Of a stretch of 64,000 nucleotides of DNA, positions 6,958 through 64,000 are shown piece by piece. The notes below the pieces were generated by a model. That model ran no database searches. It was not told the origin of the DNA and saw only the letters and a program-made list of their open reading frames with translations. Location: positions 1 to 64,000 of IMG/VR virus record IMGVR_UViG_3300037087_000760; one strand, given 5' to 3'. The position numbers were made by a program, and so were the translations under genes. Every line of letters begins with the position of its first letter. Positions within the stretch are counted from its first letter, which is position 1.

Positions 6958-7232
6958 TTTTCTTTTAATTGTTTTGTTAATTCCTTTCTTCTTTCAATTG
7001 CTTTCTCTTTATCTTCCCATTTTTCAATGAAAGTTTTTTTGAAATAGAATTTGTAATAAATAACATAAAATTTCCCTTCTTTTTCAATAACATATCTCCT
7101 TGTGGTAAATAAAGTCAACTCACTCATTAAGTAATTCCATTTTCCCTCGAAAGCAAAATGATATGTCTTTGTCCCGTATGATATATAGACAGAGAATTTA
7201 CTACCGTTTATATAAAATTTTTTAAAGTTCAT
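6954..7232 (-). CDS. Hypothetical protein
   Basis: Overlaps neighbours in operon-like packing. Confidence 0.55.
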
Positions 7233-9252
7233 TTTCTATTTTTTCATAATGAGAAAAAGTCAAATTGTTTATAGCTCTCCCCTGTGATAATGTTCTAAGT
7301 GTTGTTATAAAACCAAACTTCTCAGCCAAAGGTGATTGAACTTTGAGGATTATAGTCGAATCTGGTAATGTATTAATAGATACTATCGTAGAACGATGTT
7401 TATTAAGTTCACTAATTATATCACTCAAATATTCTTCTGGTGTCGTAATTTCTTCATCCATGATAGGTTCAAGTAAACACGGTTTACCTTTCATATAAGC
7501 CTTCGGAAACGAAATCTTCACACAAGTTTCAAAGGCGTATGGGCTTGAATCCACAACATGAGTAGAACCATCTATGATTGTTACTTTCAAACTTTCGATT
7601 TCGTTACCACCCAATGGACCACTAATCATACATTCTTTAAAAGCCTTTTCGATAGAAGTCATATATTCTCTTGGAATGTTTCCACCTTTAACCTCATTCA
7701 CAAAAATTAAACCCTTTGTATCATCGGATACAGGTTCTATTCTATACTCAATCTCAGCAAACATACCCTTTCCACCAGTTTGTCTTGATAATCTTTCTTT
7801 GTGTGTTACTGGTTGAGTTATTGTTTCTCTATAAGAAACTTTTGGTTGTCCTGTATTACATCCGACATTAAAATCAGTAATCAATCTACTTAAAATCACA
7901 TCCAAATATAATTCGCCCATACCACTAATAATGGTTTGTCCATTTTCATCTATCTTAACAGTAAATGTAGGATCTTCCTCAGTAAGTTTTTGAAGAGCAA
8001 ATCCTAATTTATCACTATCCTTATTTGTTAAGGGTTCAATGGTTATTGAAATAACTGGTTTTGGAACAATCATATTCTCAAAATGGAATGTATCTTTTGT
8101 TTCACAAAGAGTATCACCAGTTCGTAAATCTTTTATTCCAACAATACCACAAATATCACCAGCACCAACAGATTTTACTTCTATTTTCTTATTGGCTTGA
8201 ATGGTAAATAATCTTGAAATTCTTTCTGATTGTCCTGTTCTGGAATTATAAACAACTTGACCAAGTTTAAGCACACCAGAATAAACTCGAATCATAGATA
8301 ATTTTCCAGTATTTTTATCTGTCGAAATTTTAAAAACCAAAGCTGATAATTTTTCATCTTCACTTGGTCTAATTTCAACTTGTTCCGAATCTCTATTGGC
8401 ATAAATAATACCCCTATCAACTGGAGATGGTAAAAAATTCACCACAGCATCAAGTAATGTTTGTACTCCCTTATTTTTCTTAGCAGATCCACACAAAATA
8501 GGAACAATAGAAAAATCTAATGTTAAACTACGAAGATTTTTAATTATTTCTTCATTCGTTATCAATTCAGGTGTTTCCAAATACTTCTCAAAAAAGTCAT
8601 CGTTATGTTCCGAAATAGATTCAATCATTTTAATTCGGAATTTCAATGCCTGATCTAAGTATTCTTCAGGTATTACAGAAACACTATATTCCTGACCTAA
8701 TGTTTCGGAAGCCCATGTAATCAGTTTCATATCTATAAGGTCAATAACACCTTTGAAATTACTTTCACTTCCTACGGGAAGTTGAATCACAACTGGTTTC
8801 GATTTAAGTCTATCTTGAATTTGATGTACTACATTAAAGAAATCAGCTCCAATCCTATCCATCTTGTTTACAAAGGCTATTCTTGGTACTTTATATCTGT
8901 TGGCCTGTCTCCAAACTGTTTCGGATTGAGGTTGTACACCGCCGACTGCACAGAAAACAACAACGGCCCCATCTAATATTCGGAGTGAGCGTTCAACCTC
9001 AATCGTAAAATCAATGTGGCCGGGAGTATCTATAATATTTATCTTATGATCTTTCCAATACGATGTAACAGCAGCTGCCATAATCGTTATACCTCGTTCT
9101 TGTTCCTGAGGCATAAAATCGGTTACTGTATTACCATCGTGAACCTCTCCCATTTTATGATTCTCACCAGTATAATACAATATACGCTCAGTCAATGTGG
9201 TTTTTCCGGCATCGATATGGGCTACTATTCCTATATTTCTGTTAAGATTCAT
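7222..9252 (-). CDS. fusA: Elongation factor G
   Basis: [42 protein letters not shown]; 676 aa. Confidence 0.95.
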
Positions 9253-9399
9253 ATTTAATTTTTATTATATTTTCGAAATTTAATGTCGTTTAAAATGATG
9301 TTTATAAACGACATAATGACCGAAATCAGTCTGTAATGTAGGATATAAACAACAAAAAGTATATGTATAACATATCTTAAATTTTATTTATTTTATTTG

Positions 9400-9474
9400 A
9401 GTCAGAGGAGGGATTCGAACCCACGATTGTACGGTTTTGCAGACCGGTGCTTTTGACCACTCAGCCACCCTGAC
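9400..9474 (-). tRNA. tRNA-Cys(GCA)
   Basis: Full cloverleaf, anticodon loop CT-GCA-AA, T loop TTCGAAT, U73. Confidence 0.9.
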
Positions 9475-9593
9475 GAATTATTCTTCTTTGGATTCCTCTA
9501 ATCTTTTCCTGTCGAATTCTAACCATTCATCCAGTTTTTCATCAGTAAAAGAATTGAGTAATTCTACAAAATCCTCATATAAAGTATCCAAAT

Positions 9594-10214
9594 CTATTCC
9601 TTTTTCCATTTTACATTTAATGACTTATCGAATACTAACAAATATCTATGTTTACGACTTCGAGGTCTCCATTCACCCTCGACATCTTTCACTTTCCCCC
9701 TTGATTGCTTTATATATGTTCCATCTGGTTTTTTAATCCAGAAATCATTTTTGGGTTCTGTTAAACCATAATATTGAAAATTACATGCTTTATATATCGT
9801 ACCTAAATGAAAATCAGCATCAGCATAACTCAATATAACTCTAACTTTCGTATCTTTTCTCAATTGACGAATCGCCCTCGATACAAACCAACTGGTAATA
9901 TTATGTTCTACTTTTTGAATATCTGGATGAACACATAATCTACTCAACTCAAATAAACCCTCTTGATCATTTCTTTCCAATCCTAACATCCCCTTAGAAA
10001 GTTCTGGAACTGGAAAACCAGTGAAAATAATCACACCAACTAATTGTTCATTTTCAAACAGACCGTAATTAAAACCACTTTTAAATCCTCTGGAGATGTC
10101 TTTGAGATAATGAAATTTCAATAATAATTCACCAGCTTGTTCTTTGGTAATTCTACTCACATTGAAATTTTCTTTCATACCCTCATTTATAAACTCCAAA
10201 AATGTTTTTATCAT
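9594..10214 (-). CDS. mom: Mu Mom-like DNA adenine modification protein with CTS-like N-terminus
   Basis: FHYL, GLFENEQLVGVIIF, ELSRL, SWFVSRAIRQL, ILSYAD, HLGTIYKACNF; start MIKTFLEFINE just after late motif at 10220-10229. Confidence 0.8.
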   Translation of the reverse strand: MIKTFLEFINEGMKENFNVSRITKEQAGELLLKFHYLKDISRGFKSGFNYGLFENEQLVGVIIFTGFPVPELSKGMLGLERNDQEGLFELSRLCVHPDIQKVEHNITSWFVSRAIRQLRKDTKVRVILSYADADFHLGTIYKACNFQYYGLTEPKNDFWIKKPDGTYIKQSRGKVKDVEGEWRPRSRKHRYLLVFDKSLNVKWKKE

Positions 10215-10249
10215 GATTGTATATATTAATATACTCAATCATGAATTAG

Positions 10250-10342
10250 AAGCGGGGGTAGGAGTCGAACCCACTATCTAAAGGTTATGAGCCTTTAATG
10301 ATTTATGTTGACGAATCAACAATTCCGTTTCACTCTCCCGCA
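10250..10342 (-). tRNA. tRNA-Met(CAT), initiator-like, with hairpin inserted in D loop
   Basis: AAAGG-CTCATAA-CCTTT arm, T arm intact, 1:72 mismatch; D loop contains TGTTGA-TTCG-TCAACA. Confidence 0.7.
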
Positions 10343-10356
10343 ATGTATTAAAATAG

Positions 10357-10445
10357 TAGCGGATGTAAGATTCGAACTTACGACTTCCTTATGGGAAGTT
10401 TCAGCTTATGAGACTGAGGAGATAGGCCAACTTCTCTAATCCGCG
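10357..10445 (-). tRNA. tRNA-Met(CAT) with long variable arm
   Basis: C1:U72 mismatch, TCAGT-CTCATAA-GCTGA, variable hairpin ACTTCC-CATAA-GGAAGT. Confidence 0.75.
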
Positions 10446-10451
10446 ATGTGT

Positions 10452-10552
10452 GTCCTACTGTTGGTGCGACCAACCTTTCTGGAACTCATTATACCGTAGG
10501 TTAGAGCGACCAACTTTATTAGTTCAATGATATTTCCCTCTGAATTAGTAGG
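10452..10552 (-). ncRNA. Unknown tRNA-sized structured RNA
   Basis: Closed by GTCCTACT/AGTAGGAC; two similar GTTGG-TCGCn-CYAAC hairpins; sits between two tRNAs. Confidence 0.5.
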
Positions 10553-10558
10553 ACTTAG

Positions 10559-10630
<72 letters not shown>

Positions 10631-10635
10631 ATATA

Positions 10636-10884
10636 TTATTTCAATTCATGTCTGCACAATGGACATTCTTTAATTTTTATCAACCAATGAATAGTTCTCA
10701 CTACCGTTTTTTCTGGGTCATCAAAACACACCTTTTCACCATCCCAAATTCCTACGATTGATGTTTTCACAGTTTTACCATTAACTCTTTTTATGTTATG
10801 GTATTGAACTAAATCACCTTTCTTAATATCATCTAATTGTTTACCAATCAGATTTCCGTAATTGTCGTATTTACTTTCTTCCAT
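10636..10884 (-). CDS. Hypothetical protein inside tRNA cluster
   Basis: 82 aa ORF with own TAnnTTTG promoter. Confidence 0.65.
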   Translation of the reverse strand: MEESKYDNYGNLIGKQLDDIKKGDLVQYHNIKRVNGKTVKTSIVGIWDGEKVCFDDPEKTVVRTIHWLIKIKECPLCRHELK

Positions 10885-10888
10885 TTTA

Positions 10889-10920
10889 CAAAGATATAAA
10901 TAAATATTCTAATTAAAAAA
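10889..10920 (-). promoter_or_regulatory. Bacteroidota-type promoter (TATCTTTG with upstream T-run)
   Basis: Matches -7 consensus TAnnTTTG. Confidence 0.7.
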
Positions 10921-10926
10921 TCATTG

Positions 10927-10999
10927 AGATCGGAGAGGGAATCAAACCCCCGTCTCTGAGGTTGCAGCTCAGCACCTATTTACACTCGGCCATCCGACC
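10927..10999 (-). tRNA. tRNA-Cys(GCA)
   Basis: CTGAG-CTGCAAC-CTCAG arm, U73. Confidence 0.8.
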
Positions 11000-11004
11000 A
11001 TTTG

Positions 11005-11077
11005 AGCGATAAGTGGGGGTCAAACCCACGACCTTCAGCTTGGGAAGCTGACACTCTATCAACTGAGCTATTATCGC
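11005..11077 (-). tRNA. tRNA-Gly(CCC)
   Basis: TCAGC-TTCCCAA-GCTGA, U73. Confidence 0.9.
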
Positions 11078-11130
11078 ATCCGTTTGACACATCCTTTGAC
11101 ATCACCCTCTCTCCGTTATATCAAACAGCG

Positions 11131-11202
11131 AGCGAGTAATCAGAATCGAACTGACATCATCGGTATGGTAAGCCGATACACTACACATTGTGCTATACTC
11201 GC
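11131..11202 (-). tRNA. tRNA-Gly(ACC), 31:39 mismatch
   Basis: TCGGC-TTACCAT-ACCGA, Gly-type acceptor, U73. Confidence 0.75.
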
Positions 11203-11277
11203 GAATCAGTACCCGCACTTTCCGCCTTAATTATTCCCTGTTACACTGCGGTTAGGGAGTTGGTTATGATAGACCTG

Positions 11278-11360
11278 AGCGGGAGAAGGGATTCGAACCC
11301 TCACCTGAAGTTTGGAAGACTCCTATGCTAGCTTACGCGACCGTTAAACACCACTCCCGC
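11278..11360 (-). tRNA. tRNA-Gly(TCC) with D-loop insertion
   Basis: GGAGT-CTTCCAA-ACTTC; 19-nt D loop containing GC-GTAA-GC. Confidence 0.8.
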
Positions 11361-11371
11361 GAGTGATTTTG

Positions 11372-11442
11372 AGCAGATAATGAGAATCGAACTCACATCA
11401 AAAGATTGGAAATCTCTTACACTACCATTGTGCTATATCTGC
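11372..11442 (-). tRNA. tRNA-Gly(TCC)
   Basis: AGAGA-TTTCCAA-TCTTT, U73. Confidence 0.9.
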
Positions 11443-11448
11443 GTAAAA

Positions 11449-11553
11449 GGTCAGTATGTCGAATGTATTCGGACTGATTTTCGTTTTGCACATTCCTAAT
11501 CATCTGTCTTAACATCTCAGTTCACCGCCATTGTGCTACCGCGTTTACTGACC
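11449..11553 (-). ncRNA. Unknown tRNA-sized structured RNA
   Basis: Closed by GGTCAGTA/TACTGACC; carries D-arm-like TAGCACAATGG; fills the gap between two tRNAs. Confidence 0.45.
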
Positions 11554-11554
11554 T

Positions 11555-11629
11555 TGGAGCGGGATGCGGGATTTAAACCCGCGACCTGAAGTTTGGTAAA
11601 CTTCCGCTCTATCACTGAGCTAATCCCGC
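11555..11629 (-). tRNA. tRNA-Gly(ACC) with encoded CCA
   Basis: Perfect GAAGT-TTACCAA-ACTTC arm, U73-CCA. Confidence 0.9.
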
Positions 11630-11717
11630 GTGGGAGGCTATCTAAACTCTTTGACCCAATCAGATTTCTCCTGTCATGAGTTAACTTCGCCTTATTAGTT
11701 TTTCGAATGTTTTTTAG

Positions 11718-11789
11718 TAGCCCCGGCGGGAATCGAACCTGCATCCAGAAATTAGAAGTTTCTTGTTCTATCCATTGAACTACGGAGCC
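11718..11789 (-). tRNA. tRNA-Arg(TCT)
   Basis: AGAAA-CTTCTAA-TTTCT, canonical cloverleaf. Confidence 0.9.
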
Positions 11790-11838
11790 ATACTTTATAT
11801 AAACTATTTACCACCATTAAGTTTAATATTAATTATTG

Positions 11839-11916
11839 TAACCCTGAAGGGATTCGAACCCTCATTTTCATCCGTTATGCACAATCGAGTTTAGAAAACT
11901 CAGCCATTACAGGGCT
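11839..11916 (-). tRNA. D-armless tRNA-Arg(TCT)-like RNA with 22-nt variable region
   Basis: Acceptor AGCCCTG/CAGGGTT, TGAGT-TTTCTAA-ACTCG arm and T arm intact; only TAATGGC between acceptor and anticodon arm. Confidence 0.6.
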
Positions 11917-11921
11917 ATTTG

Positions 11922-12003
11922 TACCGATGGAGAGATTCGAACTCTCACTTCCGATGGAAACAAGTTCCTAAAACTTGCGTGTCTACCATTCCACCACACC
12001 GGC
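11922..12003 (-). tRNA. tRNA-Leu(TAG)
   Basis: CAAGT-TTTAGGA-ACTTG, class II variable arm, A73. Confidence 0.9.
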
Positions 12004-12029
12004 TTAAAAAGTTAAATAAGTTGTGATAT

Positions 12030-12124
12030 TGTACACCATACCCAACCCAGAGTCGAACTGGATTAGTTGGGGTCTCGAACCCCGCTTCACACAACCACCT
12101 ACTACCGTTCAGTATTATTCAACC
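12030..12124 (-). ncRNA. tRNA-derived element with two T-arm-like hairpins
   Basis: GGGG-TTCGAGA-CCCC and CCAG-TTCGACT-CTGG plus D-like TACT-GAACGGT-AGTA. Confidence 0.5.
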
Positions 12125-12128
12125 TTAG

Positions 12129-12198
12129 CAGTACAAGCAGGAATCGAACCTACATCCACCCTCTACTGAGGGTACTCTTTCCATTAAGCTACTGTACT
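12129..12198 (-). ncRNA. tRNA-like RNA lacking an anticodon loop (AGTA tetraloop)
   Basis: Acceptor, D and T arms canonical; CCCTC-AGTA-GAGGG in place of anticodon arm; G73. Confidence 0.75.
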
Positions 12199-12262
12199 TA
12201 CACATCAATTTTATTCTAGCTTATTATGATGTGATTTACACTTTTGATGTAAATATCTTTTA

Positions 12263-12330
12263 GTACTCTAAAAGGATTCGAACCTATACTCCTCGCTTAC
12301 GCGAGTGTGCTACCATTACACCATAAAGTC
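12263..12330 (-). ncRNA. tRNA-like RNA lacking an anticodon loop (GTAA GNRA tetraloop)
   Basis: GTGT-AATGGTA-GCAC D arm, CTCGC-GTAA-GCGAG, TTCGAAT T loop. Confidence 0.7.
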
Positions 12331-12430
12331 AACTTTCGTCATTGACACTGACATATCATTTCGGAAAGAACACATATTTTACTCCTTTCTGATTGTCAGA
12401 TCTTACTCGTTTCAAATTCCAGTGTTTTTG

Positions 12431-12503
12431 CAGGCAGTACGGGAGTTGAACCCGCTCCGAACGCCGTGACAGGGCGACATCTTAACCGTTTGACCTACTG
12501 CCT
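12431..12503 (-). tRNA. tRNA-Asp(GTC)
   Basis: CT-GTC-AC loop, G73. Confidence 0.85.
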
Positions 12504-12521
12504 ATGTAGGGGAACATTCTG

Positions 12522-12598
12522 CGGGCCCAGTGGGATTCAAACCCACCTGTTATTCCTGATCGACAGTCAGGTAGACACATCCAGCATCTCCTGAGCCC
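12522..12598 (-). tRNA. tRNA-Asp(GTC), divergent
   Basis: CCTGA-CTGTCGA-TCAGG, 8-nt variable loop, T loop TTTGAAT, G73. Confidence 0.75.
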
Positions 12599-12609
12599 AT
12601 TCATTATTG

Positions 12610-12709
12610 CGGTAGGAGTTGGGATCGAACCAACATATAAAGCATTCATCCTATCAGACTACTTCTGATGTCCATCGGTGGCACCCTATGAACTTTATGC
12701 TATCCTACC
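12610..12709 (-). ncRNA. tRNA-like RNA with intact acceptor/T arm and expanded centre lacking a canonical anticodon arm
   Basis: GGTAGGA/TCCTACC-G, GTTGG-TTCGATC-CCAAC, internal ATCAGA-AGTAG-TCTGAT hairpin. Confidence 0.65.
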
Positions 12710-12729
12710 ATTTATTTTTAGTATCCAAT

Positions 12730-12762
12730 ATGTCAAAGAACATATTATAATGTCAAAGAAAC
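12730..12762 (-). promoter_or_regulatory. Tandem boxA-like antitermination elements
   Basis: Two copies of TTCTTTGACAT on the tRNA-coding strand, 20 nt apart. Confidence 0.5.
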
Positions 12763-12770
12763 ATTATAAT

Positions 12771-12848
12771 TGGCGGTACATTACGGTTTCGAACCGTTGA
12801 TTTTACATGGGTGACAACCATGTTCCTCACCAAGAGGCCTAATGAACC
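12771..12848 (-). tRNA. tRNA-Asp(GTC) with encoded CCA
   Basis: CATGG-TTGTCAC-CCATG, G73-CCA. Confidence 0.8.
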
Positions 12849-27537: not shown

Positions 27538-28524
27538 TTATTTATGTAAGTCCCTGTATTTGTTGTTATAAGAAATACAAACGTCAAGGCAGTTTCCTCT
27601 ACAAATTGGATCTTCAAAACAGTTATGTTCATCGAACCATTTCTTTCTATCTGATCTCATATTTTCAGAAACCTCTCCAATTGGTTGACCATATTCTCTC
27701 ATATAAATAACACAAGGAAAATGGAAATTTCCGGCTATAACAGAATCATCCAAAACCAATGCACATTTCGATGAATCAGTTTCAGACATGCCTCTTACAT
27801 TGATTCCGTTCCTGAAATGATTTACCCTGTATTTAAGGATCGGGTACTTATTCAATAATTCTTCAGGTACTTGACCAAGAGCTTCAATCGGTTCATTCCA
27901 TTGGGCTGCCGAAATAATACGAATATCGGATACCCCCCTTGAATCAGCAAACTTGATTGTATCAATAGTTTTCTGAACATTATCGGGTGTTAAAACAACA
28001 CCAACTGTAACATAAGTGAGTTTGGAAATATGTTTGATATTTTCAACGACTTTTTCAAATGAACCAATAACCCCACCAGACATTTTTTCTCCATCATCAG
28101 CACAACAGGCATCCAATGAAATTGAGAAGTCATTAACTCCAGCCTCAATCAATTCATCGTATAGTGTAGTTCTGTTAGAACCATTGGTAGAAATGGCAAT
28201 TCTTTTAATACCCTTTGACTTAGCGTACTTTACGATTTCAATAATATCGGGATGTAATGTAGGTTCACCACCAGAAAAACGAATGTTCTCCAGAGGTAAG
28301 GGTTCACACCACAAATCGATGTTTCTTTTAATTTCTTCCAGAGAAAGCATTTTGAATTTACGATCACCGTAGATCCAAGCTTTCAAACCACGACAGTAAG
28401 GACATTTGAAATTACAATATTCAGTGATAATCATCTCACATCTTTTCATTTGAGATGAATCAGACGAATTTTTGGCTCTTTCGTCAGAAAGGGAATAGAA
28501 ACCTATATTCTTTAAATCAGTCAT
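27538..28524 (-). CDS. Radical SAM protein
   Basis: CNFKCPYC, FSGGEPTL, ISTNGS, C-terminal Cys cluster. Confidence 0.9.
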   Translation of the reverse strand: MTDLKNIGFYSLSDERAKNSSDSSQMKRCEMIITEYCNFKCPYCRGLKAWIYGDRKFKMLSLEEIKRNIDLWCEPLPLENIRFSGGEPTLHPDIIEIVKYAKSKGIKRIAISTNGSNRTTLYDELIEAGVNDFSISLDACCADDGEKMSGGVIGSFEKVVENIKHISKLTYVTVGVVLTPDNVQKTIDTIKFADSRGVSDIRIISAAQWNEPIEALGQVPEELLNKYPILKYRVNHFRNGINVRGMSETDSSKCALVLDDSVIAGNFHFPCVIYMREYGQPIGEVSENMRSDRKKWFDEHNCFEDPICRGNCLDVCISYNNKYRDLHK

Positions 28525-28577: not shown

Positions 28578-30581
28578 TTAAAGATTAACTTTCTTATTTT
28601 GAATGCTATTTTTTGATACAACCCTGACGATATAAGTACCATTAACTACATTGGTAGGAATGGTATTATTTTCATCATATATCTTCAAATGTTGAATTTC
28701 TTTACCCAATACATCATAAATATAAACATCAGATTCACCTTTATTATTAGTGATATAAACATTCTTATCATAAGAATAGATGTTTAATGATGTACTTACG
28801 ATATTATCGTTCACACCCGAAAGAGTACTTCCGAAATGTACCAGAAAACGATTGGGAATATCTGAAGTATCAGCCGTGAAAGTATATATTGGTTGTGTTT
28901 TTAAATTGATAATTTTATTCAATTTTGTATCTTCTAAAGTTACTTCATTTGAAAATGATAATTGAGTAGCTGTTAAAATATAACTTCCAGAAACCCCGAC
29001 AACCAAACCAACCTTTACGGTGGTGGCGTCCGATTCTGGAAATGTGTTTATACATTCCATTTCATTATCTTTTAATGAATAAATCTGAGGAATATTGGAA
29101 CTACCCATCCATTTTTCGACCATCCAATAATTAGGATTTCCTATCACATCATTATTGAATTTTATAACTGTTTCATCTGATGCATTGTTTCCTTCAACTT
29201 TTAATCGAAGAGAATTCGGAGTTGCCACCGTAATTTCCTTATAAAAAGGTCTGGAATTGTGCCTTCTACAATTATTATTGAATTGAATATATCCATTCGT
29301 ATATGGTTGATCAACCTTAACAAAGAATCCTTGCATCGGGGCTATGAACCTTGAACCACCATTTGTACTATCAGAATTATATCCATTTAACTTACCGATA
29401 TAAACCTTATAATAATAATTACCATTAACATCATAATCTAAAACCCAGCAATGAGGTAACATATTGGAAACATATATTTCTTGAGATTCCCAATTAATAG
29501 CACTCGGATATGGATTACCAATTAAATTATAACCACCACCAGTATTTGGGGTTCTTGTTAAATTTACTTGAATTTGTCCATTATTCAATCCCTGAGTGGT
29601 ATAGAAGGTATCAACTTTTGTAATACTATTACCGTTTCCATCAGATGACCAAACTTCATATCCCCTTCCAAGTGGTAATGGAATGTTAGTTGGAACAATA
29701 TATTGACTCCAAACACCAGCTACTTCGTCATAGTATCGTAAATAATCATGAAGAAAGGTATTGGAGACGGCATTTGGAATAGGTGATGTAATATAATGCC
29801 ATTGACCACCTTTAATATATTGTTCTACTTTAGTTGTTCCATTTAAAGTTATCTTATTGTCATTTACTGTTGTGTCAGATAAGATTGATGCGGTATTCGT
29901 TGAATTAGATTCCAAGGTCAAATTATATCCATCGAAAGTACCCATAATGGTTGTTCTTGTAATCGGAGCCAATTTAAAATTAACCTTTTGACTATTGGTA
30001 TTGGTAAGTAGATTTATTTTATTATCCACAGTTAAACCAATGGTTGTAATATATAGTGTTGTGGAAGATGATACTGATTGTAGAATTACACTTTTATCAT
30101 TACCATTACCTGTTTTTTGAATGTATAACGAACCAATGATCTGATTCGGTACATTGGTAATAGTAATATTACTATTCGTACTGATTACCAACTGATCATT
30201 ATTCTGTGGTGTATTACGAGTTGGATTCCAATTTGAACCCGTTTGCCAATTACCATTATTAGAACCGATCCATGTATATGTGGTTTGACTAAATCCAACA
30301 TTACACATCATCATAAAAAGAATCAAATAAAATGTTTTTTTCATAAAATTTGGATTTTTTCTGTTTTTTATTTCTTCATAGATTTTATATGCACCATAGG
30401 TTACACCCAATACAATGAGTATTACAACTCCATCATCTATTGGTGCACCAACTGGTGTTCCACCACCCGGAATCGGATTTCCACCGGGATCTGGGGGATT
30501 GGGTTGATCAGCTAATGAGGTAATACAAATACCGATAGTAAACAAAATCAGCAATACAAAGTTTTTCAGTTTATTTTTCAT
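28578..30581 (-). CDS. PID-CTERM-type peptide fused in frame to a T9SS type A sorting-domain secreted protein
   Basis: GAPIDDGVVILIVLGVTYG; second signal peptide from 30344; C-terminal VYIYDVLGKEI...GTYIVRV; TACCTTTG promoter at 30610-30617. Confidence 0.8.
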   Translation of the reverse strand: MKNKLKNFVLLILFTIGICITSLADQPNPPDPGGNPIPGGGTPVGAPIDDGVVILIVLGVTYGAYKIYEEIKNRKNPNFMKKTFYLILFMMMCNVGFSQTTYTWIGSNNGNWQTGSNWNPTRNTPQNNDQLVISTNSNITITNVPNQIIGSLYIQKTGNGNDKSVILQSVSSSTTLYITTIGLTVDNKINLLTNTNSQKVNFKLAPITRTTIMGTFDGYNLTLESNSTNTASILSDTTVNDNKITLNGTTKVEQYIKGGQWHYITSPIPNAVSNTFLHDYLRYYDEVAGVWSQYIVPTNIPLPLGRGYEVWSSDGNGNSITKVDTFYTTQGLNNGQIQVNLTRTPNTGGGYNLIGNPYPSAINWESQEIYVSNMLPHCWVLDYDVNGNYYYKVYIGKLNGYNSDSTNGGSRFIAPMQGFFVKVDQPYTNGYIQFNNNCRRHNSRPFYKEITVATPNSLRLKVEGNNASDETVIKFNNDVIGNPNYWMVEKWMGSSNIPQIYSLKDNEMECINTFPESDATTVKVGLVVGVSGSYILTATQLSFSNEVTLEDTKLNKIINLKTQPIYTFTADTSDIPNRFLVHFGSTLSGVNDNIVSTSLNIYSYDKNVYITNNKGESDVYIYDVLGKEIQHLKIYDENNTIPTNVVNGTYIVRVVSKNSIQNKKVNL

Positions 30582-30717
30582 ATAATTTTTTAGTTATTTA
30601 GAATTTCAACAAAGGTATGTAATATTATTGAGATAAAAAAATTTCAATAACAATCAGTATAATAATAAATTAGGTGGAAAAATTATTTAGATGGGTAAAA
30701 AAATTATTTAGAAATGA

Positions 30718-37153: not shown

Positions 37154-40100
37154 TTAAAATTTTATGATATAGAATCTTCCTTGGTCAATGATATAATAAC
37201 CAAAATCAGTCGTGAAGTATCTATAATCCAAACTATTAAAATTAGTATTGACCAACATGAAAGACCTACCTTCATTATAATTGAATAACTTATTATTTGT
37301 CATTCCGAGTCCATATCCATTATAAGATTCCGTTTCAATATACATATAAGGATCTACACTTGCATCAATATTGAAACTATAAGAAAGTAAATCTTTTTTG
37401 TAAAGTTCATGATATTGTACTGGTTCGAGTTCATTTGTTGACTGATTCAACCTGAATGTTTTTATTTTAGCAGTATAGTAATCCGGCATCGTACAACCAG
37501 TAATCATATAGAAATTAACCGTCATTAAATAATCAGTTCCCGTATTCAAGGTTTGAATGTAATCGAAATTAACAGCATTAACCTGTTGAGTCACTGATAT
37601 TTTTCTGACACGATTCGATGGATCGTAATCCATGTACATAGTCGCCACAGTTTGTTCGAGACCAGTAATATCAAGAATATTAGCTGATAGTGGAATTATA
37701 TTTCTCCTTAACCATTTAACCAATCCAGTAAGTTTTGTCTGTACCTCGGCTAATGAATATAAGTTAATATAATTTCCATCAAAATCTGTAATATGATAAG
37801 TTAAATTGAATAAGTTAGTTTTTTTATAGTTCATAGAATCTGGTTCATGAGATGTCCATCCCGGAACACTTCTATCGAATATATTTTCAATCAAAATCTT
37901 ATGAAGTTTACCATACAACAAAGAACCCTGTTTGATATTTCGATAATATTCATATAAATCCAAATCATTATATCCAAAGTAATTAATAGCATTAATAAGA
38001 GCACGATATGAACCAATATAATTATATATCTCTGGATGAACGGCTAATAATTCTTTTCTTTTTCTGTTTAGAATTGTAAAATCAATACCAGCATCTTCGA
38101 TATCACTTTCTTTATAAATTGGATAGGCATCTAATCCCAAATTAGATCCCAACATTTTCAAATTTTGATCGAATCTGTAATCTTCTATTTCAGTTTGTCC
38201 ATATAATTGAATTGTCGCTATAAGAGATGGTTCTACTTTAATTATAAAATCATATGTCTTACCTGATGCTGATGTATCAAAGAATGGTAGATTTGTATTG
38301 TCTACTGTTATTTTATTTTTTGTTAAATCGACAATCTGACTAATAGCGTAACTTTCATATAAAGTTTCTCCCGTTACAGTTATTTCAAAAAAATTCAATG
38401 ATATATTCAGCCCTACATCTAAACCAGTGTTATTAAAACTGAAAAATATATCATCAGTAATATAAGATATCGTATTTCCACTGATTAGAAAATTAACTTT
38501 TTTACCTATTTTGTTTGATGTTGTTCCAGTAAATGTTGTATGTTCGATTTGTTCAATTCTCATTGTATCTGTAATCACACCTTCATTCGGTGTATTGAAT
38601 CCCAAGAAAATTTCAAGTGGAATTGGATGATAATCATAAAAATTAGCAGCATTATATTCTTCTAATGGATATAACAATTCGTTAAAAATAGTTTGTTGAT
38701 ATTCTGGATTTGCTATCTCCAATGGATTAGTGTTTACATTTCTATTCAAAAAAACCAAATTCGTATAACCTGAATTAAACAATGGTTTTGGGCCTATATA
38801 AGTCAGATTTCCGTTTGGTTGAATTTGGTCACCTGAATAATCATAATAGAATATACTTTCGTCATACGGATCTTCCCAACTCATTTTATAATAAACCTGT
38901 TTATTGTAGTTTCCTCTTGGTTTTCTTAAAAATTCATGAATTGATATAGTAAGATTTTCAGTATAATTATTATCACTCGACCATCCGAAAAATGGACCCT
39001 GATATGATAATTGAATTGTATCTTCAGTTAATCTTAATATATTATATTGCTTATTATTTAATGTATGAGTAGAACCACTGACGGATATAATCATACCCGT
39101 AGTCAATTCAAAATCAAATAAATTCTGAGATACAGAAAATAATTCATTACTCGATATAACCATTGAATGATTTATCGTATTTTCTATTATGGTATAAGTA
39201 GAATAAGAATTAACCTTAATCTCCAAATTTATAATTTCTACATTCGGATATTGACCCTCTAATGTTAATGTATATCCACTCGTTGTTGTCCCACTACTCA
39301 GTGTAATTCCATTTTGATCAAACATTGTAAAATATTTGTCTATAAAACTATTTATGGTATCTATTGTACAACTGGTGACAGTTCCAGAAAGAGGAACATA
39401 AAAATTATTTTCATTTATTGTTAATTGAATTCCATAATTTACAGAATCAATTCCCAAATCAAATAGAATTGTTGTTTTGAAATTGTGGGCCAATAAAGTT
39501 GTATCATAAAGATGTATTGTTTCGTTTTGTAATTGTTCATTTACATTGAAATAATAAGCATCGGTTACTCCCGTCATCGTTGTTCCACTATCATAATAAT
39601 CAAAGTTTTTACCAATTGTAAGAGGAATATTATTTATCGAAGATTTGGCTGAAAAATATGGATGCCAATTATAATCCAATCCACCCAAAACCATGAAATT
39701 ATTAGTCCCATTATTCCAATGAAAACAATCAAATCCATAACGATTAAACATATTTGCATATTTATTTCTTATGGCTGTTATTGTGTTCTCATAGAAATAG
39801 GTTGTATTACCAGAATTTAAGATGTCTTGATTTACAAAGAGTTTATTTGTTGTGGAAAAACAAGTTGTGAAACCTGACCAAATGACTGTTGGTGGACAAG
39901 CGACAGCGTTTTGTTGAGCATATAATTTTTTAATCCTTTTTTTATTAATGGTTTTATCAATTTTATATGTATATCCACTCTCAGGAATTATATATTCAGC
40001 CACTTCAATTCTTCCATTTTGAATATCCAGAACTTGGAAACTTCTATTATCATGAAATGTTAATCCCGAAAGATTTGGAATGGCTGTTAAATGTATAATA

Positions 40101-41149
40101 TCATTATAGGTAAATCCAGTAATTGTACTTGTAGTTTCTATATAATTCAATCCATTCAGAACATAAAATTTACAAGTATCAGTTGTTAAATATTGAGTAT
40201 CAGCAAAACCTGTTATTGTAAATGTTGGATTATTTGGATGTATATATCCACCATTTATATCTTCGAATATCACGGTTTGACCAGTAGACACAAAATCAAT
40301 AGTTGTGTTTATCCCATTCATAAACTCGATTGTAGTTCCACTATATCCAGTATCATTATAAGTTATTTTAACATTTCCCTCATACAATTCGGGTCTTTGT
40401 GTAAACAATTCAATTTCCATTGAGATCGTACCACCTGTTACTCCACTTAAAAATAAAAAATCATAAAATTTATTATTTAAAATATTATAATCATTATATG
40501 TAAATACTCCATTATTTGAAGAACTATTAACTACGGATATTTTTTTATTTTTATAAAAATTCAAATTTGTTATATCAACTAATTTTTGTTGACCATAATC
40601 TAATACCTTAATAATATTAGCAGAAGATACTGTTCCACCACTGTTCAAAGTAAAATCAAAAGTATAGTTATCTGTTTTAGTTTCGACTAAAATGGCATTT
40701 TTTCTATGACCGAGAACATCAAAAAATGTTATTCCACTTGATATGAAATCATTATTTCCAATTCCAGTTCCAGTTACATTATTAAAATAAACAACACTTC
40801 CAATTGTAAACTTTTTATCGAAATCAGTTCCGTAAATCCATTTAGAATAAAAATTTGGATTACTATTTACTTTTTGAATATTTATAATATCTTGATTTTC
40901 AAATGTTTTACCAACAAAAGTTGTTCCACTCCAATTGAATAACTGTGATTCTCTTAAATCAAATTCAGAATTAAAATTATATGGTTTAACATCTTCAAAT
41001 ACATAAATGCAAAGGGTTCTAAATGTATCACTACTATTTTCATCAAAGAATATTTTTCCACTCCAAGTTTGTCCTGTCGGATCATATATGAAGTTATATG
41101 GAAATCCTTCTTTATTAAAAAACATTAGATTGTCAAATTGTGAGTTCAA
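37154..41149 (-). CDS. Large virion structural protein, probable baseplate wedge
   Basis: 1331 aa, T/S/G/N-rich beta character, GSYRALINAINYFG; late motif at 41169-41178. Confidence 0.6.
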   Translation of the reverse strand: MNSQFDNLMFFNKEGFPYNFIYDPTGQTWSGKIFFDENSSDTFRTLCIYVFEDVKPYNFNSEFDLRESQLFNWSGTTFVGKTFENQDIINIQKVNSNPNFYSKWIYGTDFDKKFTIGSVVYFNNVTGTGIGNNDFISSGITFFDVLGHRKNAILVETKTDNYTFDFTLNSGGTVSSANIIKVLDYGQQKLVDITNLNFYKNKKISVVNSSSNNGVFTYNDYNILNNKFYDFLFLSGVTGGTISMEIELFTQRPELYEGNVKITYNDTGYSGTTIEFMNGINTTIDFVSTGQTVIFEDINGGYIHPNNPTFTITGFADTQYLTTDTCKFYVLNGLNYIETTSTITGFTYNDIIHLTAIPNLSGLTFHDNRSFQVLDIQNGRIEVAEYIIPESGYTYKIDKTINKKRIKKLYAQQNAVACPPTVIWSGFTTCFSTTNKLFVNQDILNSGNTTYFYENTITAIRNKYANMFNRYGFDCFHWNNGTNNFMVLGGLDYNWHPYFSAKSSINNIPLTIGKNFDYYDSGTTMTGVTDAYYFNVNEQLQNETIHLYDTTLLAHNFKTTILFDLGIDSVNYGIQLTINENNFYVPLSGTVTSCTIDTINSFIDKYFTMFDQNGITLSSGTTTSGYTLTLEGQYPNVEIINLEIKVNSYSTYTIIENTINHSMVISSNELFSVSQNLFDFELTTGMIISVSGSTHTLNNKQYNILRLTEDTIQLSYQGPFFGWSSDNNYTENLTISIHEFLRKPRGNYNKQVYYKMSWEDPYDESIFYYDYSGDQIQPNGNLTYIGPKPLFNSGYTNLVFLNRNVNTNPLEIANPEYQQTIFNELLYPLEEYNAANFYDYHPIPLEIFLGFNTPNEGVITDTMRIEQIEHTTFTGTTSNKIGKKVNFLISGNTISYITDDIFFSFNNTGLDVGLNISLNFFEITVTGETLYESYAISQIVDLTKNKITVDNTNLPFFDTSASGKTYDFIIKVEPSLIATIQLYGQTEIEDYRFDQNLKMLGSNLGLDAYPIYKESDIEDAGIDFTILNRKRKELLAVHPEIYNYIGSYRALINAINYFGYNDLDLYEYYRNIKQGSLLYGKLHKILIENIFDRSVPGWTSHEPDSMNYKKTNLFNLTYHITDFDGNYINLYSLAEVQTKLTGLVKWLRRNIIPLSANILDITGLEQTVATMYMDYDPSNRVRKISVTQQVNAVNFDYIQTLNTGTDYLMTVNFYMITGCTMPDYYTAKIKTFRLNQSTNELEPVQYHELYKKDLLSYSFNIDASVDPYMYIETESYNGYGLGMTNNKLFNYNEGRSFMLVNTNFNSLDYRYFTTDFGYYIIDQGRFYIIKF

Positions 41150-45832: not shown

Positions 45833-46900
45833 TTAATCTAACCTTGTTCCACACATAGGACACCATCCATAATTTTTATTTCTAACTCTATATCCACATC
45901 TCTTATTAGGACAGTATTCTCTTCCTTGTGTTTTCACATAAGATGTATTATTAAAATTAGCGTTCGGAATTATATATGGATTATCCTGAAGTTTGAATGG
46001 ACCCGATTGATAAGGTGCTGATTGAAATGGAACATTATCATTTTTCTTTTCTGAGAATGGTAACAATTTAAAACAATAAGTTTTAATAATTGAACCACAA
46101 GTAAATTCAGTTTCCGAAAAATGTTGATTGGATTTCTTACCTTTTTCAATACGACCAGTTTCACTTAAACTCTCTGATAATAAACCATTGAATTTTAGAT
46201 TACCTCTTACATTCAAATCTCCATTGATATCAACATTACCTTTTAAATTAATATTGTTATTTAGATTTGTTGTGTATTTTCCATTAACATTGGTGGAATC
46301 TGAACTCAAACCGGCCGAACCGATATTCGGACTATTCGGACTATTTACTGACCCCCAATTTTTACCTTGATCACATACATTAATTTGTTGATCATATAAT
46401 GGATCACCACAGTAATATATTGGCCATGAAGGTGGAGTATATGGTGTTGTCCCCGGCCATGGTGTCGGCCATGGTGAAACTGGTGGAACATATGGTGGAT
46501 TGTTAATAATAATCGGACCATTTGTCCATGTATTCATACCATTCAATTTAGATTCATTCCAAAAAATGACTTCTAATTTCCCATTACCTTTAATGGCTTG
46601 TTTTGTTAATGGATTATTCTTGTCTACAAGATATGTATTGAATTTTAATTTCCTATTCGTACCGATGAATCGTTCAACAATAACGGATTGACCGGGATTA
46701 AGGACTAATATTGAATTGTCCGTTTCCGACCCATTCATTTTTAATTGAAAACCAACTCTCTCTGATAAAGGATTGTAGACTTTTAGCTGAAATTCATCTC
46801 CGTCATTAAGATAAATTTTGTTTTTGTTTTTTCCGTATAATTTGCGTTTTTGACCATTGACGAGAATTTCGCAAGACGGTGTTAAATAATTGTAATTCAT
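45833..46900 (-). CDS. Hypothetical protein with Ig-like N-terminus, Pro-rich linker and C-terminal Zn-ribbon
   Basis: FQLKVYNP...; CPNKRC...CPMCG; AAACTTTT-N14-TATAAA at 47028-47055. Confidence 0.65.
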   Translation of the reverse strand: MNYNYLTPSCEILVNGQKRKLYGKNKNKIYLNDGDEFQLKVYNPLSERVGFQLKMNGSETDNSILVLNPGQSVIVERFIGTNRKLKFNTYLVDKNNPLTKQAIKGNGKLEVIFWNESKLNGMNTWTNGPIIINNPPYVPPVSPWPTPWPGTTPYTPPSWPIYYCGDPLYDQQINVCDQGKNWGSVNSPNSPNIGSAGLSSDSTNVNGKYTTNLNNNINLKGNVDINGDLNVRGNLKFNGLLSESLSETGRIEKGKKSNQHFSETEFTCGSIIKTYCFKLLPFSEKKNDNVPFQSAPYQSGPFKLQDNPYIIPNANFNNTSYVKTQGREYCPNKRCGYRVRNKNYGWCPMCGTRLD

Positions 46901-63512: not shown

Positions 63513-64000
63513 TTAAGCCAATAATTCTATTTTTCCTTTCAAAATATCTTTCCAACGACACGACTTTCCAGTAATGTGATCAGTTACAACATCTTCTCTT
63601 ATTCTATAAGTCCTTCTTTTTTGACCTCCCCTACTTCCATTTCCAATTTGGTCATTACGAAAATTCTTATTCTTCTCGTAGTTTTTCTTATCTTCGATTA
63701 CTTTTAGTTTCTCATATAATCTCTGATAAGCTATTTCTTCATTTTTTGTTTGGTCTCTTGTGTCTTGACATTTAATTTGAATTCCAGTTGGAATATGAGT
63801 TAATTGAACACAAGAGGCCACTTTATTCACATTCTGACCACCAGCTCCAGAACTACGGATATATTTCTTAGTTATCTCATTATAATTCAACTGAAGGTCT
63901 GTATTAACTTCTGGGTTCATAATTGCCACCGTTACGAAGCTGGTTTGAACCCTACCATTCTTTTCGGTAGGTGGTATCCTCACAAAACAGTGTGATCCAC
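63513..64000 (-). CDS. prfA: Class I peptide release factor, RF1-like (5' end outside window)
   Basis: PPT, SSGAGGQNVNK, QIGNG, RTY, VTDH; frame stays open to the window edge (GSHCFVRIPPTE). Confidence 0.85.
   Translation of the reverse strand, partial: GSHCFVRIPPTEKNGRVQTSFVTVAIMNPEVNTDLQLNYNEITKKYIRSSGAGGQNVNKVASCVQLTHIPTGIQIKCQDTRDQTKNEEIAYQRLYEKLKVIEDKKNYEKNKNFRNDQIGNGSRGGQKRRTYRIREDVVTDHITGKSCRWKDILKGKIELLA

What the first reader, a model, noticed from the sequence alone, without database searches (positions are those of the whole stretch)
28578..30581. Phage-borne T9SS cargo with an in-frame PID-CTERM peptide
Seen: a 79-aa signal + Pro-rich + PID-TM unit runs without a stop into a second signal peptide (30344) and a T9SS C-terminal domain, under a host-type promoter. 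Known: PID-CTERM genes often sit just upstream of T9SS cargo in Bacteroidota. Inferred: the phage uses the host T9SS to remodel the cell surface (receptor masking or adhesion), and the fusion may yield two products.
Basis: partly seen in the sequence, partly recalled or inferred. Interest (0 to 1): 0.6.

Follow-up and report, generated by a model that had tools for sequence, protein, structure and literature searches.

The report
Phage-borne fused T9SS adhesin cassette
A giant phage of Bacteroidota carries, as one open reading frame, a host-type pair of genes (a tiny PID-CTERM membrane peptide and a RemA-like surface protein exported by the type 9 secretion system). Following it up showed that in bacteria these two genes are almost always neighbours, a pairing we found in no paper.

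Summary
ORF 28578-30581 (-) encodes 667 aa in this order: signal peptide, Pro/Gly-rich stretch, PID-CTERM motif with TM helix and basic tail (NF046080, 29.7 bits against a cut-off of 26), a second signal peptide from M80, a small beta-rich head, a 350-aa module homologous to the pre-CTD region of the Flavobacterium adhesins RemA and RemZ, and a type A T9SS CTD.

It is not an assembly error. The identical protein lies on 13 contigs, and contigs from four further peat runs cross the junction without a difference. A 34%-identical relative (P0006) has the same fusion. That relative's 78%-identical kin (P0004) has the two parts as separate genes with an ATGA overlap.

The carrier is a huge phage: a neighbouring protein is 55% identical to one in the 735-kb Mahaphage genome.

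New here: 47 of 48 PID mini-genes checked in seven Bacteroidota genomes lie beside a gene with the RemA-like module, usually just downstream of it. All 47 of 201 sampled genomes that have minis also have the module.

Most likely the fused precursor is cut twice by signal peptidase. That would give a membrane hairpin peptide and a periplasmic cargo, which the host T9SS then exports. What the mini does, and what the phage gains, are inferred only.

The parts
30610..30617 (-). TACCTTTG, a match to the Bacteroidota -7 promoter box TAnnTTTG, starting 36 nt upstream of the start codon
   Evidence: One search lists the site; the motif as a whole is not enriched (74 found, 100 expected). One search finds the same box at -38 in L007 and -34 in L009, the two related phage loci.
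30510..30581 (-). First signal peptide, aa 1-24 (MKNKLKN, hydrophobic core, SLA|DQ)
   Evidence: Sequence; hydropathy segment 4-25. The mature N-terminus 'D-P/Q-P' aligns with the invariant D25 of the mini-protein family.
30345..30509 (-). PID-CTERM mini-protein body, aa 25-79: Pro/Gly-rich periplasmic stretch, PID motif, TM helix, basic tail
   Evidence: NF046080 scores 29.7 bits on aa 47-68, window 30378-30443. All 19 invariant columns of the four-member mini alignment are kept. A profile search finds 1294 representatives, nearly all stand-alone proteins of 70-110 aa.
30288..30344 (-). Second, internal signal peptide, aa 80-98 (MKKTFYLILFMMMCNVGFS|Q), and a possible internal start codon at 30344
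   Evidence: Homologues P0002-P0005 start at the equivalent Met and have Q at +1. In L009 the cargo gene starts here as a separate gene overlapping the mini's stop by ATGA. Hydropathy segment 83-98.
29868..30287 (-). Small N-terminal head of the mature cargo, aa 99-238, modelled as short beta-strands
   Evidence: AF2 model, pLDDT 55-90 in this part. ESM Atlas neighbours carry PATR (autotransporter-type beta-helix repeat) or other heads in this position.
28809..29867 (-). Conserved ~350-aa all-beta module (RemA-like pre-CTD module), aa 239-591
   Evidence: Profile A4 hits RemA residues 993-1350 (E 7e-40), RemZ 670-1028 (6e-38) and Mfa5 776-1027 (8e-15). The module always sits directly before the CTD in 75 homologues. 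AF2 pLDDT 90. No solved fold matches it.
28581..28793 (-). T9SS type A C-terminal sorting domain, aa 597-667; stop codon at 28578-28580
   Evidence: TIGR04183 scores 25.3 bits, cut-off 23. Structural matches to the RemA, RemZ, FspA, NucA, mirolase, RgpB and PorZ CTDs at Z 7.2-9.9. A nearly invariant Lys lies near the C-terminus.

Best explanation
The ORF is a phage-carried copy of a two-part Bacteroidota cassette. One part is a PID-CTERM mini membrane peptide. The other is a T9SS type A cargo of the RemA/RemZ class. Here they are joined in frame.

Shown:
- the domain order;
- the homology of each part;
- the conserved gene pairing in bacteria;
- both a fused form and a split form (ATGA overlap) in related phages;
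- the reproducibility of the junction.

Inferred mechanism:
1. Transcription starts from a Bacteroidota-type promoter and translation from ATG 30581.
2. Sec inserts the precursor and signal peptidase I removes aa 1-24.
3. The PID TM helix stops transfer with its N-terminus out and its C-terminus in.
4. The short basic loop (aa 66-82) stays in the cytoplasm.
5. The second signal sequence (aa 80-98) restarts translocation and is cut after GFS98.

This gives two products: a 74-aa two-helix membrane peptide (D25-S98) and a mature cargo (Q99-L667) in the periplasm. These are nearly the products the split gene pair would give, which explains why fusion and fission are both tolerated. The cargo is then recognised through its CTD by the host SprA/PorV translocon and placed on the surface of the infected cell.

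The mini peptide is most likely a partner needed 1:1 with this cargo class, for hand-over, retention or anchoring. The reasons are that each cargo gene has its own mini, that the pair is translationally coupled or fused, and that minis never occur in genomes without the module.

For the phage the likeliest use is remodelling of the host surface: adhesion of the infected cell, or exclusion of other phages.
For: Architecture.

CTD: HMM above cut-off, and fold equal to CTDs bound in the translocon (PMC10994853).

Module: homologous to RemA and RemZ.

Fused and split forms:
- P0006 shows the same fusion at 34% identity.
- L009 has the split form with an ATGA overlap.
- P0006 and P0004 are 78% identical in the mature cargo.
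- L007 and L009 share other genes with this phage genome.
- In-frame mini-mini fusions P0141 and P0179 have the same short basic loop before the next signal peptide.

Gene pairing:
- 10 of the 11 genome loci found with the mini carry a cargo-family gene on the same strand within about 2 kb.
- 17 of 18 minis in five MAGs lie beside a module-bearing gene.
- 21 of 21 and 9 of 9 listed minis do so in G173 and G113.
- Phyletic nesting: all 47 genomes with minis are among the 69 with the module, out of 201 sampled.

Phage identity; PMC7162821.

Junction reproducibility.
Against: - No experimental or RNA data exist; no RNA run holds the stretch.
- Signal peptidase cleavage at both sites and the hairpin topology are read from sequence rules only.
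- Co-folding of the mini with module plus CTD gave no verdict, so direct binding is unsupported.
- In chromosomes the usual order is cargo then mini, so the phage order is atypical.
- 22 module-bearing genomes have no detectable mini, and roughly 35-50% of module copies in five genomes lack one. The module can therefore work without it.
- Two other viral homologues of the cargo have no mini.
- The promoter box is not enriched in the window.
- IMG/VR labels the record 'provirus', and no capsid, portal or terminase gene was found among the 20 large proteins scanned.
Confidence: 0.6

Rival explanations
1. Two translation products rather than two processing products. Ribosomes start independently at ATG 30581 and at the internal ATG 30344, so the cell makes the cargo mainly from M80, as in the split loci. 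The full-length fusion would then be a minor or irrelevant species.
For: M80 is the start codon of the homologous stand-alone cargo genes. The 25 nt before it are A-rich, which favours initiation in Bacteroidota, where Shine-Dalgarno pairing is weak (own knowledge).
Against: No promoter box lies inside 30345-30581, so both starts would share one mRNA. Ribosomes translating the upstream frame would occlude the internal start. The fusion is kept in two lineages only 34% identical, with a basic loop of legal topology, which suggests that the full-length form is made and tolerated. This rival does not exclude the main explanation.
Confidence: 0.25
2. The second signal sequence is not cleaved. The fusion would then make an inner-membrane-anchored protein, with the cargo tethered in the periplasm by a two-helix hairpin and the CTD unused or used only after another cleavage.
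For: Internal signal sequences can act as uncleaved anchors. The hairpin topology is predicted.
Against: The cleavage region GFS|Q, with Q at +1, is kept exactly as in homologues where it is the N-terminal signal peptide. The CTD and its conserved Lys are intact. A tether would make the CTD pointless.
Confidence: 0.1
3. Neutral read-through. A lost stop codon fused two adjacent genes and the mini part is on its way to decay, so the fusion has no functional meaning.
For: Fused and split states flip between close relatives, as expected if the state matters little.
Against: All invariant positions of the mini family are kept in the fused copies. The unit still passes the curated HMM cut-off. The fusion is found in two lineages whose cargo is only 33-34% identical. 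The protein sequence is identical across many samples and years.
Confidence: 0.1
4. The gene is not phage-borne. The window would be a bacterial chromosomal region or island, in line with IMG/VR calling the record a provirus.
For: The IMG/VR class is 'provirus'. No capsid, portal or terminase gene was identified among the proteins scanned. The cassette itself is of bacterial type.
Against: - A neighbouring 1331-aa protein is 55% identical over its full length to the 735,411-bp phage, and related to proteins of other huge Bacteroidota phages.
- The longest contig with this protein is 736,551 bp, the size of that phage genome.
- The window has an array of 14 tRNA genes, a phage-type EF-G-like gene, and mostly small ORFs without families.
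- No ribosomal or housekeeping operons were seen among the ORFs examined in the window.
- L007, L009 and LR745206 share further genes with it.
Confidence: 0.05
5. Assembly or sequencing error at the junction, for example an indel in the A-runs around 30344-30365.
For: The junction lies in A-rich homopolymer runs.
Against: The identical protein is on 13 contigs from ENA, JGI and Logan assemblies. Contigs of four further runs from different studies cross the junction with no difference. An independent fused homologue exists.
Confidence: 0.01

Closest known systems
RemA (Fjoh_0808) and RemZ (Fjoh_0803) of Flavobacterium johnsoniae, T9SS type A surface adhesins
   Same: The ~350-aa module directly before the CTD is homologous by sequence (E 7e-40 and 6e-38). 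The CTD has the same fold as the RemA and RemZ CTDs solved inside the SprA/PorV translocon (PMC10994853).
   Different: The phage protein is far smaller (569-aa mature form, against 1436 and 1114 aa). It has a short beta-rich head instead of RemA's lectin and repeat regions. It is fused to a PID-CTERM unit and is encoded by a phage. Whether remA and remZ themselves have a mini next to them could not be checked here.
PID-CTERM protein-sorting domain (NCBIfam NF046080, Pfam PF28310)
   Same: Signature P-I-D, then a TM helix, then a basic cluster. The 79-aa unit passes the curated cut-off. Its relatives are 70-110-aa stand-alone proteins of Bacteroidota.
   Different: Here the domain is not at the C-terminus of the ORF; 588 more residues follow. 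The family's 'passenger' is only about 22 residues long, so it behaves as a mini-protein rather than as a tag on a larger protein. No paper in the library mentions it, and no sorting enzyme is known to us.
Type B CTD cargo with a cognate PorP/SprF-like shuttle gene directly downstream (SprB/SprF; PMC12618676, PMC9143113)
   Same: A T9SS adhesin-type cargo has a dedicated partner gene immediately downstream, one per cargo. That paper argues for production in stoichiometric amounts. The pairing found here has the same genetic logic.
   Different: The partner here is a ~50-aa single-helix peptide with a Sec signal, not an outer-membrane beta-barrel. The cargo CTD is type A, which is held to need only PorV. 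No functional data exist.
Tripartite C-terminal sorting signals (LPXTG/sortase, PEP-CTERM/exosortase, GlyGly-CTERM/rhombosortase)
   Same: Motif, hydrophobic helix and basic tail in the same order (own knowledge of these families; layout).
   Different: No cognate processing enzyme has been identified. The signal is not attached to a sizeable passenger. Cleavage at PID is unproven.
Membrane and surface proteins encoded by huge phages of the Mahaphage clade (PMC7162821)
   Same: The carrier is related to the 634-735-kb phages predicted to infect Bacteroidetes. That paper notes that phage-encoded membrane or surface proteins may affect superinfection.
   Different: That paper does not describe a T9SS cargo or a PID-CTERM unit. 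Searches found no paper combining huge phages with type IX secretion.

Membership tests
T9SS type A cargo (TIGR04183 / Por_Secre_tail) | C-terminal domain matches the curated HMM above its cut-off and lies at the very C-terminus | tested here: met
   TIGR04183 scores 25.1-25.3 bits against a cut-off of 23, on aa 607-665 of 667. The local Pfam copy gave only a sub-threshold DUF6383 hit.
T9SS type A cargo (TIGR04183 / Por_Secre_tail) | CTD has the beta-sandwich fold of solved T9SS CTDs | tested here: met
   RemA-CTD 8gl6_D: Z 9.9, rmsd 1.9 A over 71 residues, 27% identity. RemZ, FspA, NucA, mirolase, RgpB and PorZ CTDs: Z 7.2-9.2. Foldseek probability 1.00.
T9SS type A cargo (TIGR04183 / Por_Secre_tail) | Conserved Lys near the C-terminus that contacts PorV (PMC10994853) | tested here: met
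   K664 (column K585 of alignment A3) is nearly invariant across 76 homologues. Equivalence to RemZ K1110 is inferred from position, not from a structural superposition of side chains.
T9SS type A cargo (TIGR04183 / Por_Secre_tail) | N-terminal Sec signal peptide delivering the protein to the periplasm | tested here: inconclusive
   Two signal-peptide-like segments were found by hydropathy and cleavage-site rules. No signal-peptide predictor or experiment was available. The internal position of the second one is unusual.
T9SS type A cargo (TIGR04183 / Por_Secre_tail) | Secretion depends on the T9SS, with CTD removal | not testable with these tools
   Needs expression in wild-type and T9SS-mutant Bacteroidota.
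PID-CTERM (NF046080 / PF28310) | Match to the curated HMM at or above 26 bits | tested here: met
   29.7 bits for the 79-aa unit; 25.4 bits when the whole 667-aa ORF is scored. The chromosomal relative P0123 scores 31.5 bits. P0121 and the unit of P0006 fall below the reporting threshold but align with all invariant positions.
PID-CTERM (NF046080 / PF28310) | Tripartite layout: PID motif, TM helix, basic cluster | tested here: met
   A-P-I-D at 46-49, hydrophobic segment at about 50-67, then K66, K72, R74 and K75.
PID-CTERM (NF046080 / PF28310) | Domain lies at the C-terminus of the protein | tested here: not met
   In this ORF 588 residues follow it. It is met in the split relative L009 and in chromosomal minis. 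It would be met here only after cleavage at the second signal peptide, and even then 19 extra residues remain.
PID-CTERM (NF046080 / PF28310) | Processing by a dedicated sorting enzyme | not testable with these tools
   No enzyme is known to us, and no literature was found.
RemA/RemZ-like adhesins | Homology of the pre-CTD module | tested here: met
   Profile A4 against PDB sequences: RemA E 7e-40, RemZ E 6e-38, each covering about 320 of the 333 profile positions.
RemA/RemZ-like adhesins | Lectin or adhesive head and a role in gliding | not tested
   The head (aa 99-238) has no family match and is modelled with moderate confidence.
Huge phages of the Mahaphage clade | Shared proteins with the 634-735-kb genomes; genome of comparable size | tested here: met
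   A 1331-aa protein is 55% identical over its full length to LR756501/LR756503, and 33-37% identical over parts to LR756504, LR756502 and LR745206. The longest contig with P0001 is 736,551 bp.
Huge phages of the Mahaphage clade | Phage hallmark genes (terminase, capsid, portal) placing it in the clade | tested here: inconclusive
   None was found among the 20 large proteins scanned against PHROGs. Only 211 kb of the genome is held, and no tree was built.

The most novel reading that the evidence does not exclude
PID-CTERM mini-proteins are a so far unrecognised, stoichiometrically used partner of RemA-class type A T9SS adhesins. They could be a membrane anchor, a hand-over factor or an acceptor peptide, playing for this cargo class the role that PorP/SprF-like proteins play for type B cargo. 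Huge phages would then have captured the complete two-part cassette. On this reading the in-frame fusion is a natural 'Rosetta stone', showing that the two parts act together 1:1.
Probability: 0.35. Interest if true: 0.75.

Novelty: new variant of a known kind. Interest (0 to 1): 0.6.

Why it matters
How type A T9SS adhesins such as RemA are retained on the cell surface is not settled. Current accounts give type A cargo only the general shuttle PorV (PMC12618676).

A small membrane peptide gene sits next to nearly every copy checked of one cargo class. It is never found in genomes without that class, and in phages it is sometimes fused to the cargo. This points to a missing component that can be tested by simple deletions.

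For phage biology, it is a concrete case of a giant phage carrying a complete, host-style secretion cassette. The product would appear on the surface of the infected cell. That bears on superinfection exclusion and on the behaviour of infected cells in peat.

Tried and rejected
- The word-index search with the 79-aa unit found nothing. tblastn of the unit against GenBank phages found nothing, and so did a scan of IMG/VR contigs. Low complexity probably limits these methods, because the exhaustive profile search found 1294 representatives.
- Pfam and PHROGs gave no family for the ORF.
- Whole-model Foldseek and VIA searches recognised only the CTD. The module folded alone had no significant solved-structure match: best Z 5.4, no Foldseek E below 0.001. 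The 6to1 Mfa5 chain, a sequence hit, did not appear.
- Co-folding the mature mini (aa 25-79) with module plus CTD returned 'no answer' (score 0.03). This counts neither for nor against binding.
- The radical SAM gene 53 nt downstream (27538-28524) was considered as a possible peptide maturase for the Pro-rich unit. It matches MoaA and SPASM-type maturases only far below their cut-offs. It is absent from the related loci L007 and L009, so no link is claimed.
- A lipoprotein reading of either signal peptide was rejected. Neither Cys has a lipobox (IGIC, MMMC).
- A search for a second mini, cargo or CTD gene in the 211-kb record found none.
- Literature searches for PID-CTERM, for phage plus Por_Secre_tail, for huge phages plus type IX secretion, and for the genes flanking remA and remZ gave nothing relevant. 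The 2012 RemA paper is not held.
- Relatives could not be drawn for a virus record.
Full report
**1. The observation**

The minus-strand ORF 28578-30581 is open for 667 codons. Its parts, in order:
- aa 1-24: a signal-peptide-like segment (K-rich n-region, hydrophobic core, SLA|DQ).
- aa 25-46: a Pro/Gly-rich stretch.
- aa 47-68: a match to NCBIfam PID_CTERM (NF046080). The 79-aa unit scores 29.7 bits and the whole ORF 25.4 bits, against a cut-off of 26.
- aa 66-82: a short basic loop.
- From M80 (ATG at 30344): a second signal-peptide-like segment ending GFS|Q.
- C-terminus: a match to the T9SS type A sorting domain TIGR04183 at 25.3 bits, cut-off 23.

Pfam and PHROGs add nothing.

**2. Not an artefact**

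- The identical 667-aa protein is called on 13 contigs in ENA, JGI and Logan assemblies.
- The stretch is held by at least 12 peat metagenome runs from many studies.
- Contigs from four further runs cross position 30344 without a substitution or indel.
- A relative only 34% identical (P0006, locus L007) has the same in-frame layout: signal peptide, Pro-rich stretch, S-P-I-D, TM helix, basic loop, second signal peptide ending FS|Q.

**3. The split form exists too**

P0004 is 78% identical to P0006 over the mature cargo. It starts at the second signal peptide. The gene in front of it (L009 1246-1479) encodes a stand-alone 77-aa PID mini-protein, and that gene's stop overlaps the cargo's ATG as ATGA. 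Fused and split states therefore flip between close relatives.

L007 and L009 share further genes with the 211-kb record that contains the window. One is an HD-domain protein at 66% identity, another a homologue of window gene 45833-46900 at 45%. They come from related phages.

**4. The carrier is a huge phage**

- The window has an array of 14 tRNA genes, a phage-type EF-G-like gene, and mostly small unassigned ORFs.
- Its 1331-aa protein (37154-41149) is 55% identical over its full length to a protein of the 735,411-bp uncultured phage LR756501/LR756503. It also matches the 634-642-kb phages, Lak phages and jumbo phages of Tenacibaculum and Chryseobacterium.
- Al-Shayeb et al. place those genomes in the Mahaphage clade with predicted Bacteroidetes hosts. 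They note that phage-encoded surface proteins may affect superinfection (PMC7162821).
- The longest contig with P0001 is 736,551 bp.
- IMG/VR labels the 210,983-bp record 'provirus'. I take that as a trimming artefact, but I could not see the rest of the contig. No capsid or terminase gene was found among the 20 large proteins scanned.

**5. What the cargo is**

An AF2 model of aa 80-667 is confident (pLDDT 85).
- The last ~70 residues superpose on CTDs solved in the translocon: RemA-CTD Z 9.9, rmsd 1.9 A over 71 residues; also RemZ, FspA, NucA, mirolase, RgpB and PorZ (PMC10994853).
- In front of the CTD lies a ~350-aa all-beta module. In 75 homologues it always sits directly before the CTD, whatever the protein's length.
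- A profile of this module hits RemA residues 993-1350 (E 7e-40), RemZ 670-1028 (E 6e-38) and Mfa5 776-1027 (E 8e-15) among PDB sequences.
- Folded alone (pLDDT 90), it matches no solved structure.
- In the ESM Atlas the same body follows many different heads: ice-binding, He_PIG, BD-FAE esterase, BspA and LRR, PKD.

It is therefore a common stalk or carrier module of one class of T9SS surface proteins. The phage version has only a small head (aa 99-238).

**6. The mini-protein family and its pairing**

A profile of four minis finds 1294 representatives at E <= 0.001. The best 150 are almost all 70-110 aa, and P0001 is the only long one.

NF046080 is found in 45-47 of 201 sampled Bacteroidota genomes, at up to 23 copies, mostly in open frames of 60-170 aa. 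It is found in none of 14 control genomes.

Gene neighbourhood:
- Ten of the 11 genome loci found with the mini carry a cargo-family gene on the same strand within about 2 kb.
- In five Bacteroidales or Bacteroidota MAGs, 17 of 18 minis are same-strand neighbours of a module-bearing gene. Fourteen lie immediately downstream of it; three lie upstream with a ~530-aa gene in between.
- In two further genomes, 21 of 21 and 9 of 9 listed minis lie 600-900 nt downstream of a module.
- Where the next gene is convergent (L029, L031, L032, L033), the partner can only be the upstream cargo.

Phyletic pattern: the module occurs in 69 of the same 201 genomes, and all 47 genomes with minis are among these 69.

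It is wrong about the usual order, and too broad about the cargo. I found no paper that mentions PID-CTERM.

**7. How the fusion most likely works (inference from sequence rules)**

- The loop between the PID helix and the next hydrophobic segment is short and basic: 5 K/R against 2 D/E here, and 6 against 0 in P0006. It is also basic in two natural mini-mini fusions, P0141 and P0179.
- By the positive-inside rule the loop stays in the cytoplasm. The second signal sequence then restarts export with the same orientation it has as an N-terminal signal peptide.
- Its cleavage region, with Gln at +1, is conserved with homologues that start there. Gln at +1 fits the Bacteroidetes 'Q-rule' for signal peptidase I substrates (own knowledge).
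- Cleavage would give a 74-aa hairpin peptide and the cargo Q99-L667. These are nearly the same products as from the split pair, which explains why fusion and fission are both tolerated.
- Internal initiation at M80 is possible as well, because its upstream region is A-rich. It is not needed to explain two products.
- The cargo would then use the host T9SS.

**8. What the mini does**

This is not shown. The data are: one mini per cargo, tight operon spacing, ATGA coupling or fusion in phages, and strict dependence on the module. Together they argue for a partner used in step with the cargo. This resembles the PorP/SprF-like shuttles encoded downstream of type B cargo, which are argued to be needed stoichiometrically (PMC12618676).

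Points against an obligatory role:
- 22 module-bearing genomes have no detectable mini.
- Roughly 35-50% of module copies in five genomes have no mini.
- Two viral homologues of the cargo lack one.

Co-folding gave no verdict.

**9. What the phage gains**

This is inference only. A surface protein made in the infected cell could promote adhesion. It could instead occupy or mask surface structures and so exclude other phages. Nothing here discriminates between these.

The promoter claim rests on one TAnnTTTG box, which is not enriched in the window. Its position is conserved in the three related loci, starting at -36, -38 and -34.

**10. Verdict**

- Observation: confirmed.
- Interpretation: partly supported.
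- The thing itself is a new variant (phage-borne, fused) of known families.
- The by-product may interest T9SS specialists more: a near-universal pairing of PID-CTERM minis with RemA-class cargo.

Read laying was given 2401 letters.

Noticed in passing
window 9399-12848 (- strand): An array of 14 tRNA genes (Cys x2, Met x2, Gly x4, Arg, Leu, Asp x3). One, at 12128-12198, is reported by ARAGORN with an undetermined anticodon. GC rises to 0.35-0.40 there.
   Followed up: no
window 7222-9252 (-): A 676-aa protein matching the phage family 'translation elongation factor' (phrog_6880, E 1e-127). It is an EF-G-like gene next to the tRNA array.
   Followed up: no
window 27538-28524 (-): A radical SAM protein 53 nt downstream of the cargo. 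Its matches to MoaA and SPASM-type maturases are far below their cut-offs. It is syntenic in all copies of this phage but absent from the related loci L007 and L009.
   Followed up: partly
G000 whole record; window = C1:1-64000: IMG/VR classes the 210,983-bp record as 'provirus', 71% complete. The same protein lies on a 736,551-bp contig, the size of the largest known phage genome. The label is probably a trimming artefact.
   Followed up: partly
proteins P0141 (155 aa) and P0179 (146 aa): These are two complete PID mini-proteins fused in frame (signal, Pro-rich stretch, PID/PLG, TM helix, basic loop, then the same again). They are natural parallels of the mini-cargo fusion.
   Followed up: partly
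G173:C1:523000-587000: A tandem array of 11 module-bearing genes of 1030-1095 aa. A PID mini downstream is listed for 10 of them; the listing is truncated. It looks like a large paralogous adhesin array.
   Followed up: no
L026, L028, L030, L034 (Bacteroidales MAGs): A conserved locus: DPP-IV-type peptidase, XerD-like recombinase, ribosome hibernation factor, then PID mini, a ~530-aa protein with a dockerin-like C-terminal motif, and a 750-aa cargo. P0003's locus has the same upstream genes and an uncalled 400-nt gap where a mini would fit.
   Followed up: no
L012 1943-2833 and L027 5180-6918: Proteins with Pfam PTL_trimer (PF26696) or a shared N-terminal motif flank the cargo-mini pairs in chromosomal loci.
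   Followed up: no
L007 1-981 (-): An IS605 OrfB / TnpB (Cas12f1-like) gene lies on the 8-kb phage-like contig that carries the second fused copy.
   Followed up: no
L025 1685-2101 and window 63513-63983 (-): A small peptide-release-factor-like ORF (GGQ motif) in the 634-kb phage LR745206, just upstream of its cargo homologue. Its counterpart at the window's end is 43% identical.
   Followed up: no
whole window: The Bacteroidota -7 box TAnnTTTG occurs 74 times against 100 expected from shuffles, so it is depleted rather than enriched.
   Followed up: partly
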